Positions 11,882-52,470 are shown, counted from the stretch's first letter. The stretch is DNA of 64,000 nt from Malacoraja senta (GCA_038087875.1 CM075989.1:11904001-11968000); one strand, 5' to 3'. Numbers and translations are program-made. Notes: generated by a model from the letters alone, not told the origin.

Positions 11882-12358
11882 ACAGTCTGTGGGCAAGTAC
11901 TGAGGCAGTGTTGTACTGTCAGAGTACTGATCTGTGGGAGGGCAATACTGGGGGAGTGCCGCACTGTCAGAGGGGCAGTATTTAGGGAGTGATGCACTGT
12001 TAGAGGGATAGTACTGAAAGAATGCTGCTCTGTGGGAAGGGCAGTACTGAGGGAGTCATGCACTGTCAGAGGGGCAGTATTGAGGGAGTGTAGCACTGTG
12101 GGGGGGGGCAGTATTGTTGGAGTGCTACACTGTGGGAGGGGCAATACTGAGGTAGTCAGGCAAAAGGAAGGGGCAATATTGGGGAAGTTCAACACTGTGG
12201 GAGGGGCAGACTGAGGGACTACTGCACTGTCAGAGGAGCAGTACTGAGGGAGCACTGCACTGTTGGAGGGGCAATATGAGAAAGTACTGCACTGTCAAAG
12301 GAGCAGTACTGGAGTGCTATTCTGGCAAAGGTGCAGTGCTGAGGGAGTACTGCACGGT
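11882..12358. repeat. 33-bp minisatellite (~14 diverged units, consensus GGGCAGTACTGAGGGAGTGCTGCACTGTCAGAG)
   Basis: cactgt-type anchors at 11962, 11995, 12028, 12061 and 12094 give period 33. Related shorter arrays at ~12500-12620 and ~14430-14650. Confidence 0.9.
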
Positions 12359-12359
12359 C

Positions 12360-12830
12360 ACCTCAGTCTCAGAGCTCTGTTTTGTCTGTTCAGGTGGTAT
12401 TTTTGAAGAAGACCAGGAGACTATATAACATTCTCACATCTGAGCCAAGTGGTGGTGGGTTGAAGGACCCCGTGAGCTACCTGGTATAAAGCTGCAGGAA
12501 CAGTACTCAGGGTGTGACGCACTGTCACAGGGGCAGTCCTGAGGGAATGATGTGCTGTCTCAGGATCAGCACCGAGAGTGTGCTGTATGGTCGACGGGTC
12601 AGTATTGAGGGGGGACTATGTTCTCATCTACTTTCCAATATCTGCTTTCTGAACAACATCACAAAAAGAGATGATCTGGCTATTGGCTTCTCATCATGTT
12701 TGGGATCAGACTGTGCACAAGCAGATATGTTACCGTAATGGACTACATTTGAAAAGTTTTCACTGGCTGCAGAATGCTTTTTGATGTCCAAAGGATGTGA
12801 AAGGTGCTATAGAAATCCAAGTCTTTGTCT
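12360..12830 (+). mobile_element. Deu-domain SINE (SacSINE1-like) remnant
   Basis: caggtgg...tttgaagaagaccaggag, aacaacatcacaaaaagagatgatctgg, gtgaaaggtgctatagaaatccaagtcttt. Related pieces at ~14800-15070, 21930-22170, 23310-23520, 31400-31700 (-) and 32760-33020 (-). Family assigned from recalled consensus. Confidence 0.6.
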
Positions 12831-13957: not shown

Positions 13958-14679
13958 CTGCAGGAAGCAAAGGATAAAACATCTCAATCATCTCAGAGCA
14001 AACACTCAGATAGAATGTACTCAAGGATGTTTCATCACATTACTGACCACGGCCAATCACCCCAATGCTTTCGTCATTATCACCAAATCCCATCCTCCCA
14101 TTGCCAATTGAAAAGCCAGCAGGCCCTTCATCCTGTGACCAAGGAATCCTGACTCCTCCATATATCCCCTCCTCCCTGATTTCTTCACCGGATTTTTTAT
14201 AATTAATAAATGACCATACAATACTCAGCACCATAAAATAACACACAAGTACTCAGTTTTGTTATTTCCCCTGCATTTTTTGATATTATAGGGATTAAAA
14301 ATTAGCAACATCTGAATGTAATCATCACAGTAACAATCAAAGAAGAGAAAACCAAGTCCACGGCAAATCATAAGAAGCACTCAAAGGGGTTAAGTTTCAT
14401 TATAAATGATCATCGAAAGCCAGGAAGCTTTGAGGGTGCCCTGCACTGTCTGAGGGGCAATTCTGAGTATGCCCCACACTGTCGGTGAGACCTGACTGAG
14501 GGTGAAGTGCACTGTCAGAGGGACAGTGATGAGGGTGCACCTCACTGTCCGAGGGCCTGGGCTGAGGGGTACTGCTTTGCTGGAGGAGCTGAGCAGAAGG
14601 AGTTCCGAAGTGTGGAGAGAAAATATTGAAGGATCACCACTCGATTGAGGGAATGCATCACTCTAGAATGCGCAGTACT

Positions 14680-26521: not shown

Positions 26522-26737
26522 TTTAAGAAAGAACTGCAGATGCTGGGCAAATCGAAGGTAGACAAAAAAACTGGAGTAACTCAGTGGGTGAGGCAACATC
26601 TATGGAGCGAAGGAATAGGTGACGTTTTGGACTGAAGAAGTCTGAAGAAGGGTCTCGACCCGAAACGTCGCCTATTCCTTCGCTCCATAGATGCTGCCTC
26701 ACCCGCTGAGTTTCTCCTGCTTTTTTGTCTATCTCTG
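26522..26737. mobile_element. Penelope-terminus-derived inverted-repeat element inserted in a CR1 remnant
   Basis: Arms ...ctcagtgggtgaggcaacatctatggagcgaaggaataggtgacgttt / aaacgtcgcctattccttcgctccatagatgctgcctcacccgctgag; 12-bp TSD ttcaatatcatg (26510-26521 / 26738-26749). Confidence 0.88.
26639..26672 (+). ncRNA. Minimal type I hammerhead ribozyme motif (PLE type)
   Basis: CTGAAGA-A-GGGT(CTCG)ACCC-GAAA-CGTC: intact CUGANGA/GAAA core, 4-bp stem II, palindromic ACGT helix III, GUC triplet ending at 26669. Helix I is very short. Confidence 0.7.
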
Positions 26738-26809
26738 TTCAATATCATGAAGGGTTTGCTCAGAGAAAAAAAGGTTCCTCCTAGCAGGGGGATCAATGGA
26801 TTGGAGATT

Positions 26810-35959: not shown

Positions 35960-36385
35960 GAGCACTGGGCACCATGAGCTGGACATGGGCAGTGGGTATT
36001 GAACACTGGAGTGCAGCCACTGGATATTGAGTAAGGGACGTTGGGGAGTGAGCGTGGACTGTTGATCACTGGGAGCGGGCGCTACATATTACTCAGTGGC
36101 CAGTGGGCACTGGATATTGGATGGTGAGAGCTGGGCACTGGATGTTACCGGGCACTGGATATTGGATGGCAGGGACTGGGCACTGGATGTTACTTAGTGG
36201 GCAATGGATATTGGATAGTGATGAACGGGCACTGGATGTTAGTGGGCACTGGATGTTATACAGTGGCCAGTGGGTACTCGATATTGAACGCTGGGGATTA
36301 AGCACTGGATAATGAGGAGTTGGTCCTGGACTTCAAACCCTGTACACTGGGTATTGGCCATTGGGTATTGAACAGAGGGCACTGC
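35960..36385. repeat. Degenerate tandem repeat of GGGCACTGGAT(A/G)TT(G/A) with variable spacers
   Basis: More than 10 recognisable copies, starting about 40 nt into RASGRF1 intron 1. Confidence 0.85.
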
Positions 36386-37813: not shown

Positions 37814-37997
37814 TTTAAGTAGGAACTGCAGATGCTTGAAAATCGAAGGTGGACAAAAATGCTGTAGAAACTCAGCGTGTGCAGCAGCATCTATGGAGCG
37901 AAGGAAATAGGCAACGTTTTGGGCCGAAACGTTGCCTATTTCCTTCGCTCCATAGATGCTGCTGCACCCGCTGAGTTTCTCCAGCATTGTTGTCTAC
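37814..37997. mobile_element. Penelope-terminus-derived inverted-repeat element
   Basis: Near-perfect ~70-bp arms centred on aacgttttgggccgaaacgtt plus an unpaired ~35-nt tail; 16-bp TSD ctggaacct(g/a)tggttg (37798-37813 / 37998-38013). Confidence 0.9.
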
Positions 37998-39289
37998 CTG
38001 GAACCTATGGTTGGACTGAACTAGAATGGCAAAGTACACTGGTGAACCAAATGAGCTTTAATAACCACGAGGTTTTGTGGTCATTTTTACCAATATTAGG
38101 ATTTTTAAATTTAAATTTAAAATGTATTTAACTAACTGAATTTAAATTCATGCTTTGCCTTTGAAGGACTGCAACCAGGTTTAGCCCCAGTGCTCTTGAC
38201 TGCGAGTTGAGTAATGCAGCTTTGCCCAGGTGTTGGCTGATCACTATTACATGAGCTCAGGGTTATACAACAAGTTTGAGCTTTTTAAGCCACCAATTTA
38301 GAATTCATCTCCCTTCACAGGGAATAATCACCGCCTTTCCCCAGTCTCTAATTCCCTTTTTTATTATGTCCAATTTAACATCTGAAATTAAACACTACTT
38401 CATTAATTAAAGTCCAGTTAAAGCAAATTGGCATTTGCTGCAGCGGATTGTGGAGATTAGAGAGTCTCTGAATTACTGACTGCAGGCTGCACAAGTCATC
38501 GCAGTACCTTGGTAATAAATCAGCCATGTAATAGGTGGTCAGAGGAAGAATAGTGGGGAAAAATAGTGATGAGTAGAAGGTTACTCTGATTAATCAAAAA
38601 ATTAATAAATATGTCTGACAAACTGAAGGACTAACAGGGAGAATGAACCATGCACCTTATTTTTGATTTGTAAAGATTATATAAGGGGGAATCTAACTGG
38701 GGTGTTCAAGGCAATTAATGGACTTGATTGGGCCTGGGGAAACCAGAGTTGGGTGGGGCTGGAGGGGCCATTCTGAAAAAGCAAGGCTTCACACGGGGAG
38801 GTCTGGAATCCTGGAAAAAAAAAACACCTCCCCAAGGAATTCTTCTGGCACAGAGTGGGAAATGTCAGTGGAAAGTTTCAATAGCAAGACTGGTTGCATT
38901 TTATTTAGTAATGATTCTGAAATTACAAAAGGTAAACCTAGGCAAAGTATAGATTAGGCATGAGCTTGTTGACTAATGGAACAAATGAAAGGAGATGAGC
39001 AGGCTTCTCTTCCACTGTTTCAGTGATTATTCGGGATATCTTCTGTTTTTGACATATGTTCTTACTCTGAGATTCTTCCTTGTATGAATTCAATGGCATG
39101 GATATGGAGAGTGATGTTTAATGCAGTGTTTGACTAATTGCTGCCACAAGGAGCCTTCTTGACAGATGCTAAAGTGTATTGAGGGGAAAGTCCCCAGTGC
39201 CTGAAATTATATCTGGCACAAGGAAGGTGGCTGTTTTAATTATAGGTTAATCATGTCATACTCTGGTCATCATTCATGCTGGGCTTGGG

Positions 39290-47609: not shown

Positions 47610-47793
47610 TTTAAGAAGGAACTGCAGATGCTGGAAAATCGAAGGTAGACAAAAGTGCTGGAGAAACTCAGCGGGTGGGGCAGCATCTATGGAGTGAAGG
47701 AAATAGGCAACGTTTCAGGTCGAAACGTTGCCTATTTCCTTCTCCCCATAGATGCTGCCTCACCCGCTGAGTTTCTCCAGCATTTTTGTTTAC
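47610..47793. mobile_element. Penelope-terminus-derived inverted-repeat element
   Basis: Same family as 37814-37997; perfect 15-bp TSD cgtccattaaacttc (47595-47609 / 47794-47808). Confidence 0.9.
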
Positions 47794-48259
47794 CGTCCAT
47801 TAAACTTCAACTCCTGAGCTATTCTTGGCCTGTCCCTACCCCAATCGCTCATCAGGGATCGAACCTTGTGTGCTCTCTAGCAAGGAATCTAAACCAGGTG
47901 CTGTCCAGCGTTGTGTGATAGCTGGATAGGGAAAGCAGCATAGGGAAAGCAGGATTCACGATGAGTTTTCATTGCAGCATCCATTCCAGGTCCCAGTGAT
48001 TGAATTCACCACACATTGAACAGCAATGAATAGTTACGATTTTGCCAACATGGATCTGATGAGCAAGGAGGCAAACGGGTCTGAGGATGAACTGGAATCA
48101 TCAAACCCACAGGCTGGCCTGTGGAACCACTATATTACGCAAACTCTCAATGCTTAAATATGAAACTTAACAGCTGCAATAATAAATTGTTAACACATCT
48201 AGCCTCATTCCCTTACATTCTTACAACCTACCTAATGTCCCCACTACTTTATGCCATTT

Positions 48260-48490
48260 CCATGACTAAGAGCACTCGGAGTGGAAGGCGCCAACACTTC
48301 TGAGTCTCTCCCATGCCATGGCCATATGCCTATAATGGAAGGAGCATGCCAAATCCCAAAAGACCCACCCCTCTTCTCACCAAGCACCACCTGTCTCATC
48401 TGTGGCAGAAACTGCAGACATTGCTGGGCACCTCAGAACCCATGGAACTGGAAACAAATCATCCTCAAACTCGAGGGACCATCTAAGTAG
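48260..48490 (+). mobile_element. RTE-clade LINE 3' remnant
   Basis: TTCLICGRNC...HLRTH-like C2H2 knuckle (cacctcagaacccat) followed by a short 3'UTR atcatcctc...gaggga; resembles RTE/BovB-like C-termini. Confidence 0.5.
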
Positions 48491-48546
48491 ACAACGGGCT
48501 CAAAACCATGGGCCTGGCCTTGAATCAGAGCACTCTCTCTTGGTAT

Positions 48547-49157
48547 CAGGGCTTTGGAGTCGTTGAGTCGGAGTCAGAGAAATTTTGGTGCTGCTTGAGT
48601 CGGAGTCAGAGTTGGTAAAAAAAAAGTCCCAACTCCGACCTCAACATAAATTTCAGAGACTACGTAAATCAGAGACAACGTAAACCGGAAAAAATCCCAC
48701 TTAACTACCTATGCATTTAGTTTTAATTTCTTTTGCACTTGAGAATTTCTTTTTGTCATAATTTAGCCAATTAGCTCATACCTGTGGCCTTCGTTTAATA
48801 AATTTTGGAGTAAAGCTTTATAATTTTTATTTAATTCAATGGTATTTTAAATTTTTTCATAGTCCTATATGTTTTTTTTTTTATTTTAGCATAATGAATA
48901 ATTTTTTTCAAGAATAAACAATAAAAAAGCTACAATAGCATAGCTACAACCATTACTCAAAACTTTAAGGACATGGGTTTAAAAGGTAGCCTGATGATTC
49001 ATGTAGTTCTTATGAAATGCCATCCTGTGTAATGTCATCATAGCAGATTTAGAATTATTATAGCTAGGGGTCAGAGTCGGAGTCAGAGTCAGAGTTGGAT
49101 ACACAAGAAATCAAGGAGTCGGAGTCAGGTGTTTTGGGTATCGACTCCACAGCCCTG
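48547..49157. mobile_element. Non-autonomous hAT DNA transposon (MITE-like)
   Basis: TIRs CAGGGCTTTGGAGTCG / CGACTCCACAGCCCTG (15/16); perfect 8-bp TSD CTTGGTAT (48539-48546 / 49158-49165); subterminal GAGTCG/GAGTCA hexamer repeats; AT-rich interior with no ORF. Confidence 0.92.
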
Positions 49158-49619
49158 CTTGGTATAGAGGTACCCTCCAGTATCATCTCTTTTTCTACAA
49201 GAATGTGAGGCAGGGTATGGGAAGCTGTGGTAGGCAGATGATTATTGAGTTGATTTATGTTGGCTGCTCTGTGCCCAAGTCACTTTTAAGGTAGCTACTG
49301 TCCAACAACTCAGCTACCAGTTGGAGTTCCCACCCTTGGGACAGATAGAGGAGAAAGATTTGAAGTGCAACCTGTGGCACTGAAAGAGGCTCTTCAAAAG
49401 TTTTCCAATCACTCCCACGGCCCTGGTCTTCCCCAGAAACCCTGCACCTTTTTCCTGGGTTTAATTTCAACTCAATTCTTGGCCTCGAAAGGCTGGTTAT
49501 CTGATTATCCTGCAACCAATGAAAGATAAAGGGACGTGCAAAACACAAGTGCTGGAGCAACTCAGTGGGTCAAGCAGCATCCATGGAGGAAATGGATAGG
49601 CAATATTTCAGTCAGTCCT

Positions 49620-49761
49620 TCTTCTTCTTCTTGCATATGGCGTGCACGGCCTAAAGTTGTAGGACAACTTGTTCTATTTGATCTTATTTGATTGTGCATG
49701 CCAGGTTGATTGCATTCGTCGAAACAGGGCGGACCACGTGAAGGTTGCATTCTTCCACCCC
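49620..49761 (-). mobile_element. Short non-autonomous retroelement (SINE-like) with 5' HDV-like ribozyme and (GAA)n tail
   Basis: Interrupts a Penelope-derived inverted repeat. Flanked by an imperfect 12-bp direct repeat, tcagtcagtcct (49608-49619) / tcagtgagttct (49762-49773). Minus-strand 3' end is GCAAGAAGAAGAAGA; no obvious tRNA A/B boxes. Confidence 0.8.
49708..49761 (-). ncRNA. Minimal HDV-like (CPEB3-type) self-cleaving ribozyme fold, 54 nt
   Basis: GGGGTGG(P1) AA GAATGCA(P2) ACC(P3) TTCACGT(L3) GGT(P3') CCGCCCT(P1', G1-U wobble) GTTTCGA(vestigial P4) CGAA(J4/2, catalytic C at 49718) TGCAATC(P2'). One A-A mismatch in P2. Confidence 0.82.
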
Positions 49762-50317
49762 TCAGTGAGTTCTGACCCAAAACCCTCACTTATCCATTCT
49801 CTCCATAGATGCTGCCTGACGCACTGAGTTACTCCAACACTTTGTGTTTGCTCAAGATTCCAGCATCTGACGTTCCTTGAATTTCGATTGGGCTGTTTCC
49901 ACCGTTTGGCTGTCCCAAAGTTCTTTACTGTTAATGAAGCATTGATATTGCTTTAATGTAGTCACATGCACTGGGATATAGTGAAAAACTGTAAAGTATA
50001 TTTGAAGTGTTGTCATTGTTCGAACATAACAGCCCATCTGCACACATTGAGATCCTACACGCTGTAATGTGACAATGATTATCATTGGCGATGGATGGAT
50101 ATATGGGCCCAGGTACACATGTAGAAACCCGCTGACCTTCTTTGAAATTGAACGTTGGTATTTTATAAACCCAGTGGAGTGGGCAGTAACCGTTGAGCGG
50201 AGAAAATGTTTAGGATAAACCTTCATCCGTATCCAAAGTTTTCAATAGTTTGCAGGAGAGGTGCTCTGAAAGCGAATGCATCAAGGGCTTTATCACTAAG
50301 GTATGAAACTAAACAAT

Positions 50318-50580
50318 GGGAGAGGAGGAAGGAACGACAGGGAGTAGCCAAGAGAGAAGAGAGCATTGCGAGAAGGGAGAGGAGGGATGGAGAGGGGAGA
50401 AGAGAAGTAAGGTTAGAAGTGGGAAAAGGGATGAGAGGATGAGAAGAACAACAGAGGACGGAGGAGGGTGGAGGAGAGAAAGGGAGGAGGGAGGAGTAAA
50501 GGGAATAAAGAAGCAGGGAGAGGGAGGTAGGAGGGAGAGAGGAGGTAGGAGAGTACCTTGGAAGAGATATCAGGGAGAGT
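50318..50580 (+). repeat. GA-rich polypurine low-complexity tract
   Basis: Runs of ggag/gaga; explains several spurious ORFs. Confidence 0.9.
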
Positions 50581-51749
50581 GATGACTTCTTCACTTGAAA
50601 TCAGTTTAATCTGCAATAAGATGTTTGTTGGGAAGATTGACAGTAGGAGAAACATGGGGTTAGACATTCCTCAGTGTCTGTGCCAAAATTACACCAACTA
50701 CTCCTTTAAGCATTTTCAAGCTGACAACTTATTCATCATTTTTGTAACATGTTTTCCTAAAGTGATGAAATGATTGCTGCAAGACTTAGAGACAGATTAC
50801 TTGAAGCAATTATTGGTGACAGAAGGAACTGAACAATTTCCCCTCGCAGGGAAGCACAAGCTGGGAACTGGGTGATAGTTTCTAGGGGACTGCCTGCTGA
50901 GTTTTGCACTGTCTCTTCAAAGCTCACTTTCACACAAGTTATGCACCTTTATGAGAACAAGAGCCAATCACCCTTCAGGTCTGTACTGCTGGTCAGTGAG
51001 ATCATGATTGAACTATGACTTACCTCCATCTACTTGTCGTTGTTCTGTTTTCCTCAAAGCCTTTGCCAAATGAAAACAATTAAAGATAATTGGACAGATA
51101 CATGGATAGGAATGGTTAAGAGGGATCTGGGCAAATGCAGGAAAATGCAATTAGCCCAGTAATTTCAATTGACCACAGGTTGAAGCTTTCTTGGGGTCAT
51201 GGGGTGGGGTGGGGGTGGGGTTGGGGTCGGGGGTGAGGGATGGGGGGAGAGAGAGAGAGAACTTCCTTATTTGTACTGCCCTTGTGGGAGGATGTTTTTT
51301 TCTGGCACCATCTCTGCATTCCCTCCATCCAAATCTTGATATCAGGTTTTGTCTGACAATCTTATCCATGGAATTTGTATTTTGGCTAATTTTGTTGTGT
51401 AAATGCAAATTGTTATGTTAGCACATAGCATAGATTTTCATTTAAAGTGGAGTTGATACCAGTTTAACCACCTGCTCTGGGCTCCCTCTGTTCATTCCAC
51501 GGAAGGGAGATTAGAGCAACATGAATTCTGCTCGCCACATAAAAATGGTCTCTGTGGATATCACTCGATTATTGTCTGTCCCCCTTTTTTTTCGTTTTGA
51601 ACAACAGGGATTTAATGAATAGAAAATCAGCATTTCTTCAGCATGTACTTTGGCATTGGGCAAACTAATGGCAGAGGGATGGGATTCAAATTCACACATG
51701 TGGAAGCTAATGGAACATTAGGAACACAACACACAGCTCCTCAAGCTGG

Positions 51750-52470
51750 TCAATAGACAATAGGTGCAGGAGTAGGCCATTCGGCCCTTCGAGCCAGTCA
51801 ATGTGATCATGGCTGATCATCCCCAATCAGTACCCCGTTCCTGCCTTCCCCCCATATCCCTTGACTCCACTATCTTTAAGAGCCCTATCTAGCTCTCTCT
51901 TGAAAGTATCCAGACACCTGGCCTCTGCTGCCCTCTGAGGCAGAGAATTCCACAGACTCACAACTCTCTGAGAGAAAAAGTGTTTCCTCGTCTCAGTTCT
52001 AAATGGCTTACCCCTTATTCTTAAACTGTGGCCCCTGGTTCTGGACTCCCCCAACATCGGAAACATGTTTCCTGCCTCTAGCATGACCAAACCTATAACA
52101 ATCTTATATGTTTCAATAAGATCCCCTCTCATCCTTCTACTCCAGAGTGTACAAGCCCAGCCGCTCCATTCTCTCAGCATATGACAGTCCCGCCATCTCG
52201 GGAATTAACCTTGTAAACCTACACTGCACTCCCTCAATAGAAAGAATGTCCTTCCTCGAATTAGGGGACACAATACTCCAGGTGTGGTCTCACTAGGGCC
52301 CTGTACAACTGCAGAAGGACCTCTTTGCTTCTACACCCGACTCCTCTTGTTATAAAGGCCAACATGCCATTCGCTTTCTTCACTGCCTGCTGTACCTGCA
52401 TGCTTACTTTCATACACTGATGAACAAGGACCCCCCAGATCCCGTTGTACTTCCCCTTTTCCCAACTTGG
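51750..52470 (-). mobile_element. CR1 LINE 3' fragment (relatively young)
   Basis: RRMRGDLIETYKIV...SRTRGHSLRIRGKPFRTETRKHFFSQRVVSLWNSLPQ; caatagacaatag tail. An adjacent second CR1 3' end lies at ~52505-52830. Confidence 0.9.

What the first reader, a model, noticed from the sequence alone, without database searches (positions are those of the whole stretch)
49620..49761. SINE-like retroelement whose 5' end is a minimal HDV-like ribozyme
Seen: on the minus strand the element starts GGGGTGG-AA-GAATGCA-ACC-TTCACGT-GGT-CCGCCCT-GTTTCGA-CGAA-TGCAATC. This forms the full nested double pseudoknot: 7-bp P1 with G1-U wobble, P2 6/7, 3-bp P3, and J4/2 CGAA. The L3 loop UUCACGU is, from recall, the same as in the mammalian CPEB3 ribozyme. 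P4 is reduced to about one base pair closing a UUCG loop, giving only 54 nt. The predicted cleavage site (5' of G49761) abuts the target-site duplication exactly, and the element ends in (GAA)n. Known: HDV-like ribozymes process the 5' ends of R2, RTE and L1Tc retrotransposons and some non-autonomous derivatives. Inference: this is a promoter-less SINE family that excises its 5' end from read-through transcripts by self-cleavage and borrows a LINE RT. I do not know of such a family described in cartilaginous fish, but I cannot verify novelty.
Basis: partly seen in the sequence, partly recalled or inferred. Interest (0 to 1): 0.92.

Follow-up and report, generated by a model that had tools for sequence, protein, structure and literature searches.

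The report
Ribozyme-headed mini retroposon, shark genome
A very abundant ~143-base jumping element begins at its first base with a complete, stripped-down HDV/CPEB3-type self-cutting RNA fold, so it most likely trims its own 5' end; LINE elements are known to do this, but it has not been described for cartilaginous fish, and cutting itself is untested.

Summary
On the minus strand, 49761-49708 can be drawn as a full HDV-type double pseudoknot. P1 is 7/7 with a G1.U wobble, P2 is 6/7, P3 is 3/3, L3 is UUCACGU, there is a C22-G37 P1.1 pair, and J4/2 is CGAA. P4 is reduced to a 5-nt linker.

The element is a retroposed insertion with an 8/9 target-site duplication and a (GAA)4 tail. It splits a palindromic host repeat.

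It belongs to a huge family. Tens of thousands of contigs in runs labelled with at least 7 coded organisms carry it. Their flanks diverge exactly at G49761.

A strict HDV descriptor hits once in the window, against 0.025 per random surrogate. Of 4227 Rfam families, only CPEB3 and HDV-type models match, in the right register but below threshold.

Two sea-star contigs carry the same 54-nt core. All 8 differences fall where the fold tolerates them, including two compensatory P2 pairs (p about 1e-4).

Best reading (0.8): a bipartite non-autonomous LINE derivative whose head is a minimal self-cleaving ribozyme. Cleavage, the LINE partner and the lack of a promoter are inferred.

This scan had already noted the same family at many other places in this genome, and follow-ups there reached the same reading.

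The parts
49762..49770 (-). Upstream copy of the target-site duplication (ACTCACTGA)
   Evidence: It matches 49608-49616 at 8/9 and lies directly 5' of G1.
49708..49761 (-). 54-nt minimal HDV/CPEB3-type ribozyme candidate; predicted cleavage 5' of G49761
   Evidence: Pairings. Strict descriptor 1 against 0.025. Rfam CPEB3 15.9 bits and HDV-F-prausnitzii 13.5 bits in register. Sea-star covariation.
49755..49761 (-). P1 5' strand GGGGUGG; pairs with 49726-49732
   Evidence: 7/7 with G1.U36 and U5.G32. The family variant G32>A gives U5-A32.
49746..49752 (-). P2 5' strand GAAUGCA; pairs with 49708-49714 (pseudoknot)
   Evidence: 6/7. The sea-star relatives give 7/7, with two pairs changed on both sides.
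49733..49745 (-). P3 (ACC/GGU) enclosing L3 UUCACGU; C22 (49740) pairs with G37 (49725) as P1.1
   Evidence: L3 is identical to CPEB3. No variant of at least 4% anywhere in L3 in 8 runs.
49726..49732 (-). P1 3' strand CCGCCCU
49719..49725 (-). G37 (P1.1) plus a UUUCGA linker in place of P4
   Evidence: The sea-star version has one extra U here. Minimal HDV-like ribozymes lacking P4 are a recognised subclass (PMC10879173).
49715..49718 (-). J4/2 CGAA; C49718 is the candidate catalytic cytosine
   Evidence: The second letter (49717) is G, U or A among family members, which fits the free position of C-N-R-A. The sea star has CUAA.
49708..49714 (-). P2 3' strand UGCAAUC
49631..49707 (-). Body and 3' domain, including a 7-bp hairpin AAGUUGU-CCU-ACAACUU at 49654-49670
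   Evidence: The hairpin is in the minimum-free-energy fold. The frequent family variant at 49661 falls in its loop. Its role as a reverse-transcriptase recognition module is inferred.
49617..49630 (-). (GAA)4 + GG microsatellite tail
   Evidence: Contig flanks diverge at 49618, 49620, 49621 and 49623, a ragged 3' end as expected for a tail of variable length.
49608..49616 (-). Downstream copy of the target-site duplication (ACTGACTGA)
49527..49607 (.). One arm of the palindromic host repeat that the element interrupts
   Evidence: Alignment A1 with intact copies at 47625-47810, 37835-38005 and 26546-26740. Repeat families D2-D7.
49771..49860 (.). Other arm of the interrupted palindromic host repeat

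Best explanation
This is one copy of a very abundant, ORF-less, ~143-nt non-LTR retroposon. It is best classed as a bipartite non-autonomous LINE derivative and resembles a SINE only in size. It has two modules.

The 5' 54 nt fold into a minimal, P4-less HDV/CPEB3-type double pseudoknot. When a source copy is transcribed as part of a longer RNA, the ribozyme cleaves just 5' of its own G1. This follows the established HDV-family mechanism, with the J4/2 cytosine and Mg2+. Cleavage releases an RNA whose first base is the first base of the element.

The 3' hairpin and the ...UGCAA(GAA)n tail are then used in trans by a LINE reverse transcriptase for target-primed reverse transcription. This produces a ~9-bp target-site duplication. 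Because the cut lies upstream of the ribozyme, every full-length daughter copy inherits an intact ribozyme.

Shown here: the fold in the sequence, the insertion signature, the family's abundance, the exact 5' boundary, and conservation of the fold across phyla.

Inferred: the cleavage itself, read-through transcription, and the LINE partner.
For: - All pairings and core letters are present.
- The strict descriptor gives 1 site in the window against 0.025 per surrogate. That is about 2e-7 per position, and the hit sits exactly at the repeat's first base.
- On an 81-nt search, only CPEB3_ribozyme (E 0.031) and HDV-F-prausnitzii of 4227 Rfam families match, both in the correct register. The sea-star version hits HDV_ribozyme and HDV-F-prausnitzii.
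- The insertion splits a host repeat and has an 8/9 target-site duplication.
- Summed contig depth is in the millions inside 49617-49761 and a few hundred outside. In three DNA runs, 318, 347 and 319 contigs run past 49761 into flanks with no consensus.
- Frequent family variants inside the ribozyme are G45>U/A (the N of CNRA), G42>A (linker) and G32>A (U.G to U-A). All are structure-neutral.
- Sea-star contigs L005 and L008 share only the 54-nt core with the shark element. Their 8 substitutions and 1 insertion fall in P2 (two compensatory pairs, mismatch repaired), the P1 wobble, J1/2, the linker and the N of J4/2.
- Random placement of 8 changes keeps all pairs and core letters in 1.35e-4 of trials.
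- There is no tRNA-like or other small-RNA head.
- P4-less HDV-like ribozymes are a recognised subclass (PMC10879173). Ribozyme-headed LINEs and their bipartite derivatives are established (PMC5786205; PMC8256844).
Against: - No cleavage data exist.
- All Rfam scores are far below the gathering thresholds (15.9 against 35; 13.5 against 44). Nothing was reported in a 4-kb or whole-window search.
- The family majority keeps an A.A mismatch in P2.
- P1.1 is a single C-G pair and P4 is absent, so activity could be weak.
- Nested-fold energy is no better than shuffles, although pseudoknots are not modelled there.
- Among copies, the catalytic C is lost about as often as other CpG cytosines (6.4% against 8.5-9.8% in X9). 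That is what dead copies would show and gives no positive support.
- RNA-labelled contigs run through the cleavage site.
- Covariation rests on three sequences (72 of 500 shuffles do as well).
- The two sea-star copies also share about 280 nt upstream of G1.
Confidence: 0.8

Rival explanations
1. A refinement of the best explanation, not an exclusive rival. The element arose by internal deletion of an autonomous LINE that itself starts with this ribozyme and ends with the same hairpin and UGCAA(GAA)n tail. This is how NARTc arose from L1Tc, RIME from Ingi, SIDEs from R2 and the Vingi-1_EE derivatives. The alternative is an independently assembled SINE.
For: Kojima 2018 (PMC5786205) states that bipartite ORF-less derivatives are known only from RTE, Ingi, Vingi and R2, and that they keep the LINE's exact 5' end, probably because of a 5' ribozyme. 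An earlier scan note (s1-140056, unchecked by me) reports a Vingi LINE in this genome that starts with a CPEB3-type ribozyme. The sea-star element seems to end in a similar ...TTGCAAGAAGA... tail (E 0.067).
Against: No LINE with this head or tail is in the window: blastn of the element finds only itself. I therefore tested neither half of the claim. The tail similarity to the sea star is weak.
Confidence: 0.55
2. The element is a retroposon whose 5' end is set by transcription initiation from an internal Pol III or Pol II promoter. The HDV-like fold would then be an inactive relic, or would serve only as a stable 5' structure or promoter, not as a self-cleaving RNA.
For: A sharp 5' boundary is also what a fixed start site gives. 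The L1Tc Pr77 region is both promoter and ribozyme (PMC3383444), so the two roles can overlap. The sense strand has no run of four or more T that would stop Pol III. Cleavage is untested.
Against: There is no tRNA, 5S, 7SL or snRNA similarity. A promoter role does not explain compensatory changes in P2 or a U.G to U-A change in P1. It also does not explain retention of L3, G37 and C-N-A-A between a shark and a sea star while the rest of the element is unrelated.
Confidence: 0.12
3. Chance resemblance: an ordinary repeat whose first 54 nt happen to be drawable as an HDV fold.
For: A loose descriptor finds 5 sites in the window against 2.65 in random sequence, so loose HDV-like drawings are common. 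All Rfam scores are below threshold.
Against: The strict descriptor gives 1 hit in 40 surrogates of 128 kb searched, and here the hit coincides with the element's first base. An independent relative in another phylum shows structure-preserving differences only.
Confidence: 0.02

Closest known systems
NARTc / L1Tc (and RIME / Ingi) of trypanosomes
   Same: A short ORF-less non-autonomous non-LTR element whose first ~77 nt are an HDV-like ribozyme that defines the RNA 5' end. It is mobilised in trans by the parent LINE (PMC3185411, PMC3383444; PMC5786205).
   Different: NARTc is a protist element with a poly(A) tail, a longer ribozyme that includes P4, and a proven promoter function (Pr77). Here we have a vertebrate element with a (GAA)n tail, a 54-nt P4-less ribozyme, an unknown promoter status and an unidentified parent LINE.
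R2 SIDEs (short internally deleted R2 elements) of Drosophila
   Same: Head (HDV-like ribozyme) plus 3' reverse-transcriptase-binding tail, with no ORF (PMC3414825).
   Different: SIDEs insert site-specifically in 28S rDNA and depend on rRNA co-transcription. This family is dispersed, with unrelated AT-rich flanks. This copy sits in an unrelated repeat.
Mammalian CPEB3 ribozyme (Rfam RF00622)
   Same: Best Rfam match. Identical L3 UUCACGU, the GU after P1, J4/2 CGAA, the G1.U wobble, GGGG...CCCU in P1, a 7-bp P1 and a 3-bp P3. P1.1 would be the same weak C-G plus U.U (from my knowledge of CPEB3).
   Different: CPEB3 is a single-copy intronic locus with a long P4. P2, P3 and half of P1 differ in sequence. 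The score of 15.9 bits is below the threshold of 35, so this is not a member of that Rfam family.
Minimal (P4-less) HDV-like ribozymes, including phage theta ribozymes
   Same: A double pseudoknot without a P4 domain, about 50-60 nt (PMC10879173).
   Different: Those were found in metagenomes and phages, next to tRNAs. Their eukaryotic occurrence and function are described as undetermined. Here the minimal form heads a eukaryotic retroposon.
Vingi-clade and RTE-clade LINEs and their bipartite derivatives
   Same: These are the vertebrate LINE clades known to give head-plus-tail non-autonomous derivatives. RTE has predicted 5' HDV-like ribozymes (PMC5786205).
   Different: Vingi is not among the six clades listed there as carrying a 5' ribozyme. 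I could not test the link to either clade in this window.

Membership tests
HDV-like (delta-type) self-cleaving ribozymes | Nested double pseudoknot: a 7-bp P1 starting at the cleavage site, a P2 crossing it, and a 3-bp P3 inside P1 | tested here: met
   P1 7/7, P2 6/7, P3 3/3; 98% of cells paired, against 29-46% when the partners are slid.
HDV-like (delta-type) self-cleaving ribozymes | G1.U wobble closing P1 at the cleavage site | tested here: met
   G49761 with U49726. Kept in both sea-star copies.
HDV-like (delta-type) self-cleaving ribozymes | L3 with U..C..G pattern, and a P1.1 pair between an L3 C and the G after P1 | tested here: met
   UUCACGU, with C22-G37. Invariant in all three sequences.
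HDV-like (delta-type) self-cleaving ribozymes | Catalytic C opening J4/2, followed by N-R-A | tested here: met
   CGAA at 49718-49715. The family varies only at N. Sea star has CUAA.
HDV-like (delta-type) self-cleaving ribozymes | Covariation supporting the helices | tested here: inconclusive
   Two P2 pairs change on both sides, one mismatch is repaired and one wobble becomes a Watson-Crick pair. Only 3 sequences are available (72 of 500 shuffles do as well). The placement test gives p = 1.35e-4.
HDV-like (delta-type) self-cleaving ribozymes | Score at or above the Rfam gathering threshold of an HDV-type model | tested here: not met
   CPEB3 15.9 against 35; HDV-F-prausnitzii 13.5 against 44. 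No hit at gathering level. These models include P4 and cannot score the P2 pseudoknot, so this bears on those curated families, not on the fold class.
HDV-like (delta-type) self-cleaving ribozymes | Mg2+-dependent self-cleavage 5' of nucleotide 1 | not testable with these tools
   Needs in vitro transcription and a cleavage assay.
Minimal (P4-less) HDV-like ribozymes | P4 domain absent or replaced by a short linker, with the rest of the core intact | tested here: met
   A 5-6 nt linker (UUCGA or UUUCGA) lies between P1.1 and J4/2. Subclass described in PMC10879173.
Mammalian CPEB3 ribozyme (RF00622) | Sequence and structure score above the family threshold | tested here: not met
   15.9 bits against 35.
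Mammalian CPEB3 ribozyme (RF00622) | Single-copy position in the CPEB3 intron | tested here: not met
   It is the head of a dispersed multicopy element.
Bipartite non-autonomous non-LTR retroposons (NARTc, RIME, SIDE, Vingi/RTE derivatives) | Insertion signature: target-site duplication, 3' microsatellite or A-rich tail, no ORF | tested here: met
   8/9 duplication of 9 bp, (GAA)4 tail, 143 nt, host repeat interrupted.
Bipartite non-autonomous non-LTR retroposons (NARTc, RIME, SIDE, Vingi/RTE derivatives) | Dispersed multicopy family with a fixed 5' end | tested here: met
   Depth cliff and loose ends at 49761 in all DNA runs laid.
Bipartite non-autonomous non-LTR retroposons (NARTc, RIME, SIDE, Vingi/RTE derivatives) | Head and tail shared with an autonomous parent LINE | not tested
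   No such LINE is in the window.
Classical SINE (SINE1/2/3/U) | Head derived from 7SL, tRNA, 5S or snRNA, with an internal Pol III promoter | tested here: not met
   ARAGORN finds nothing. The Rfam E-value search of the head returns only HDV-type ribozymes.

The most novel reading that the evidence does not exclude
The CPEB3-type ribozyme core (L3 UUCACGU, GU, CGAA, G1.U) is the ancestral head of an old, deuterostome-wide lineage of ribozyme-processed LINEs and their mini derivatives. That lineage left very many copies in cartilaginous fishes and has relatives in sea stars. The single mammalian CPEB3 ribozyme would then be an exapted fossil of one such insertion. Some 'orphan' minimal HDV-like ribozymes from metagenomes may be eukaryotic retroposon heads.
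Probability: 0.25. Interest if true: 0.85.

Novelty: new member of a known kind. Interest (0 to 1): 0.62.

Why it matters
HDV-like ribozymes are known to define the 5' ends of several LINE clades and of a few non-autonomous derivatives. [quoted passage not shown] They contain no high-copy vertebrate mini-element and no P4-less form.

Here the smallest workable version of the design, a 54-nt ribozyme plus a ~90-nt tail, has become one of the most abundant repeats of a cartilaginous fish genome.

This matters for three reasons:

- It gives minimal HDV-like ribozymes a concrete eukaryotic function.
- It offers a compact natural 5' processing and protection module of the kind now used in retrotransposon-based gene-writing templates (PMC13708176).
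- Its unpaired core is letter-for-letter that of the mammalian CPEB3 ribozyme, and it recurs in a sea star. The question of where the CPEB3 and HDV ribozymes came from therefore becomes testable by comparative genomics.

Tried and rejected
- Rfam E-value search of 48000-52000, and a gathering-level search of the whole window, found no HDV-type hit. The hits appeared only when 81 nt were searched alone.
- ViennaRNA nested folds of the 54-nt and 142-nt RNAs gave z-scores of 0.12 and -0.57. This is uninformative because pseudoknots are not modelled. P1 is in the minimum-free-energy fold, but an A8-U29 pair and a 12-14/24-26 helix compete with P3.
- My loose HDV descriptor is not significant (5 against 2.65), so I discarded it as evidence.
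- There are no other copies or fragments of the element, and no LINE sharing its tail, in the window.
- The metagenome pattern scan returned 8 of 10 hits that are chance matches in GC-rich bacterial genes.
- Scans of viral contigs and prokaryote genomes found nothing.
- MAFFT misaligned the 3' half of CPEB3, so I compared CPEB3 by hand.
- RNA-labelled runs hold the element, but as assembled contigs that run through G1. They cannot show or exclude cleavage.
- Rfam did not confirm a hammerhead in the host palindrome; it returned only generic hairpin/miRNA hits.
- Ruminski 2011, Webb 2009 and Kojima 2011 are not held in the library.
- Literature searches found no ribozyme-headed retroposon described for cartilaginous fish.

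Full report
**What is in the sequence**

Read on the minus strand from 49761, the sequence is GGGGUGG-AA-GAAUGCA-ACC-UUCACGU-GGU-CCGCCCU-GUUUCGA-CGAA-UGCAAUC. A script confirmed the pairings:

- P1 is 7/7, with G1.U36 and U5.G32 wobbles.
- P2 is 6/7, with an A12.A52 mismatch.
- P3 is 3/3.
- C22 of L3 can pair with G37 as P1.1.
- J4/2 is CGAA, with the candidate catalytic C at 49718.
- P4 is replaced by a 5-nt linker, at most one U-A pair closing UUCG.

This is correct. The published human CPEB3 ribozyme (primer sequences in PMC5984629) and the Rfam consensus both have UUCACGU. They also share the GU after P1, CGAA, and the GGGG...CCCU part of P1.

**It is a retroposed insertion**

The element interrupts a palindromic repeat that occurs about ten times in the window. 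Alignment with intact copies places the insertion between the two arms.

The flanking duplication is ACTCACTGA (49770-49762) against ACTGACTGA (49616-49608), 8/9. G49761 is the first base after the upstream copy.

The 3' end is ...UAUGCAA(GAA)4GG.

**Is the fold more than chance?**

A loose descriptor of my own (any 7-bp P1, P2 with up to one mismatch, P3, a C in L3, a G after P1, and CNRA) is not informative. It finds 5 sites in the window against 2.65 +/- 1.65 in first-order Markov surrogates.

Adding three family hallmarks (G1, U36, and L3 of the form U.C..G) leaves one site in the window, this one. Forty surrogates gave one site in total, about 2e-7 per position. That single site coincides with the first base of a repeat.

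Rfam reported nothing when 4 kb or the whole window was searched. When 81 nt were searched alone, the only two of 4227 families returned were CPEB3_ribozyme (15.9 bits, E 0.031) and HDV-F-prausnitzii (13.5 bits, E 1.1). Both had the cleavage site, L3 and J4/2 in register.

Both scores are well below the gathering thresholds. The element is therefore not a member of those curated families, whose models include a P4 and cannot score the P2 pseudoknot.

Nested-fold energies are unremarkable, as expected for a pseudoknot.

**It is a very large family with a razor-sharp 5' end at G1**

All sampled 31-mers of the element occur in DNA runs labelled with at least seven coded organisms.

I laid Logan contigs of eight runs on the region. 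Summed depth is in the millions from about 49617 to 49761. It falls to a few hundred within the next bin on either side. The tool warns that this sum is not a copy number.

In one DNA run, 20,239 contigs were laid on the element alone.

In the three large DNA runs, 318, 347 and 319 contigs continue beyond 49761 into sequence with no consensus (agreement 0.33). On the 3' side the flanks diverge at 49618, 49620, 49621 and 49623, inside the tail.

So copies do not extend upstream of G1, and tail length varies. Only one copy lies in this window.

**Variation among copies**

This copy's ribozyme equals the family majority at all 54 positions. The copy differs from the majority only at 49648 and 49699.

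The frequent variants, likely at subfamily level, inside the ribozyme are:

| Variant | Frequency | Position in the fold |
|---|---|---|
| G45>U | 15-43% | free N of C-N-R-A |
| G45>A | 6-13% | free N of C-N-R-A |
| G42>A | 3-22% | linker |
| G32>A | 5-31% | turns U5.G32 into U5-A32 |

P2 shows no variant of at least 4%.

The catalytic C is changed to U in 6.4% of depth in run X9. The two other CpG cytosines are changed in 8.5-9.8%. This is what decaying dead copies would show and says little either way.

One oddity: the CpG inside L3 (49738/49737) shows no variant of at least 4% in any run. This may reflect constraint on source copies, or only the reporting threshold.

**An independent relative**

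A pattern scan of metagenome contigs returned eight chance hits in bacterial genes and two AT-rich contigs, L005 and L008. The run index assigns these two to 'starfish metagenome' and to a coded organism that holds them in both DNA and RNA runs. They are therefore most likely sea-star genomic DNA.

They carry the same core:

GGGGUGG-AA/GA-GGUGACA/GAUGACA-ACC-UUCACGU-GGU-CCACCCU-GUUUUCGA-CUAA-UGUCAUC

Outside these 55 nt, blastn finds no similarity to the shark element except a weak match of the tails. L005 has ...ATTGCAAGAAGACAAGAGG and the shark has ...TATGCAA(GAA)4GG (E 0.067).

All eight substitutions and the single insertion lie where the HDV model tolerates them:

- Two P2 pairs are changed on both sides (U-A to G-C, and G-C to A-U).
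- The A.A mismatch is repaired to U-A.
- One A-U becomes G-U.
- U.G becomes U-A in P1.
- The remaining changes are in J1/2, the linker and the N of J4/2.

With three sequences the formal shuffle test is weak (72 of 500). Slid-partner controls pair only 29-46% of cells, against 98% for the proposed structure.

In a simulation, eight randomly placed substitutions kept all pairs and nine core letters in 1.35e-4 of trials.

The sea-star version hits Rfam HDV_ribozyme (18.8 bits) and HDV-F-prausnitzii, again in register.

One caveat: the two sea-star contigs also share about 280 nt upstream of G1. The context there may differ from the shark's.

**What it is and how it most likely works**

The head is not a Pol III-type head. 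ARAGORN finds nothing, and Rfam finds no tRNA, 5S, 7SL or snRNA similarity.

The architecture is a ribozyme head joined directly to a structured 3' domain and a microsatellite tail. The 3' domain includes a 7-bp hairpin at 49670-49654 that appears in the minimum-free-energy fold. This matches what Kojima (PMC5786205) calls bipartite ORF-less non-autonomous LINEs. Those are known from RTE, Ingi, Vingi and R2, and they keep the exact LINE 5' end, probably because of a 5' ribozyme.

The mechanism I commit to has four steps:

1. A source copy is co-transcribed within a longer RNA (inferred).
2. The ribozyme cleaves 5' of G1 (inferred from the fold and the exact boundary).
3. A LINE reverse transcriptase recognises the 3' hairpin and tail in trans and performs target-primed reverse transcription (inferred from the duplication and the tail).
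4. Daughter copies inherit the whole ribozyme (observed as the invariant 5' end).

An internal promoter cannot be excluded, because L1Tc's Pr77 is both promoter and ribozyme (PMC3383444).

The parent LINE is not in this window. An earlier scan note (s1-140056) reports a Vingi LINE in this genome with a CPEB3-type ribozyme at its 5' end. I could not check it. Vingi is not among the six clades listed in PMC5786205 as carrying a 5' ribozyme. Traces of Vingi do exist in the human genome (PMC5753468).

**Novelty**

Ribozyme-headed LINEs and non-autonomous derivatives are established: R2 and its SIDEs, RTE, and L1Tc with NARTc. P4-less HDV-like ribozymes are established too. The kind is therefore known.

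Literature searches found no such family described for cartilaginous fish, or any high-copy vertebrate example. Repbase and Dfam could not be searched.

The same scan had already flagged this family at many other places in this genome. Three follow-ups there reached the same reading. My tests are independent of theirs, but this is not a new discovery within the scan.

The most interesting open point is the letter-for-letter identity of the unpaired core with the mammalian CPEB3 ribozyme, together with its presence in an echinoderm. This makes a retroposon origin of CPEB3 testable.

**Verdict**

- Observation: confirmed.
- Interpretation: supported, with cleavage, promoter status and LINE partner still inferred.
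- Class: new member of a known kind.
- Interest: moderate to high.

Noticed in passing
L005:852-908 (minus strand) and L008:598-654 (plus strand): Two contigs from a 'starfish metagenome' (probably sea-star genomic DNA) carry the same 54-55-nt CPEB3-type minimal ribozyme core with compensatory P2 changes. The rest of the element is unrelated to the shark one, except for a possibly similar ...TTGCAAGAAGA... tail in L005. The two contigs also share about 280 nt upstream of G1, and parts of the downstream module recur upstream in L008.
   Followed up: partly
window 49737-49738 and 49641-49642: Two CpGs of the element (in L3 and in the 3' domain) show no variant of at least 4% in any of 8 runs. 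The other CpGs of the same element vary by 5-22%. This is either constraint on source copies or a threshold effect.
   Followed up: partly
window 49685-49705: A subfamily of the element differs by an indel of about 10 nt in the body. Many contigs are laid with gaps of 10. Loose ends at 49685 have a consistent consensus (CCGTTTGTGCACGTCG...) in several runs.
   Followed up: no
window 26546-26740, 37835-38005, 47625-47810, 49527-49607 with 49771-49860, and about 8 more: An abundant palindromic repeat (GCTGGAGTAACTCAGCGGGT...). The centre of its longer form reads CTGAAGA-GGGTCTCGACCC-GAAAC, like a hammerhead core. An earlier scan note calls these Penelope-derived palindromes. Rfam on 26590-26700 returned only generic miRNA-hairpin hits and no hammerhead.
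   Followed up: partly
window 11932-12565 and 14447-14555: A degenerate ~33-nt tandem repeat array (CTGTGGGAGGGGCAGTACTGAGGGAGTG...), apparently a minisatellite.
   Followed up: no
window 36102-36289: Two tandem copies of a 94-nt unit built from GGGCACTGGATATTGGAT-like subrepeats.
   Followed up: no
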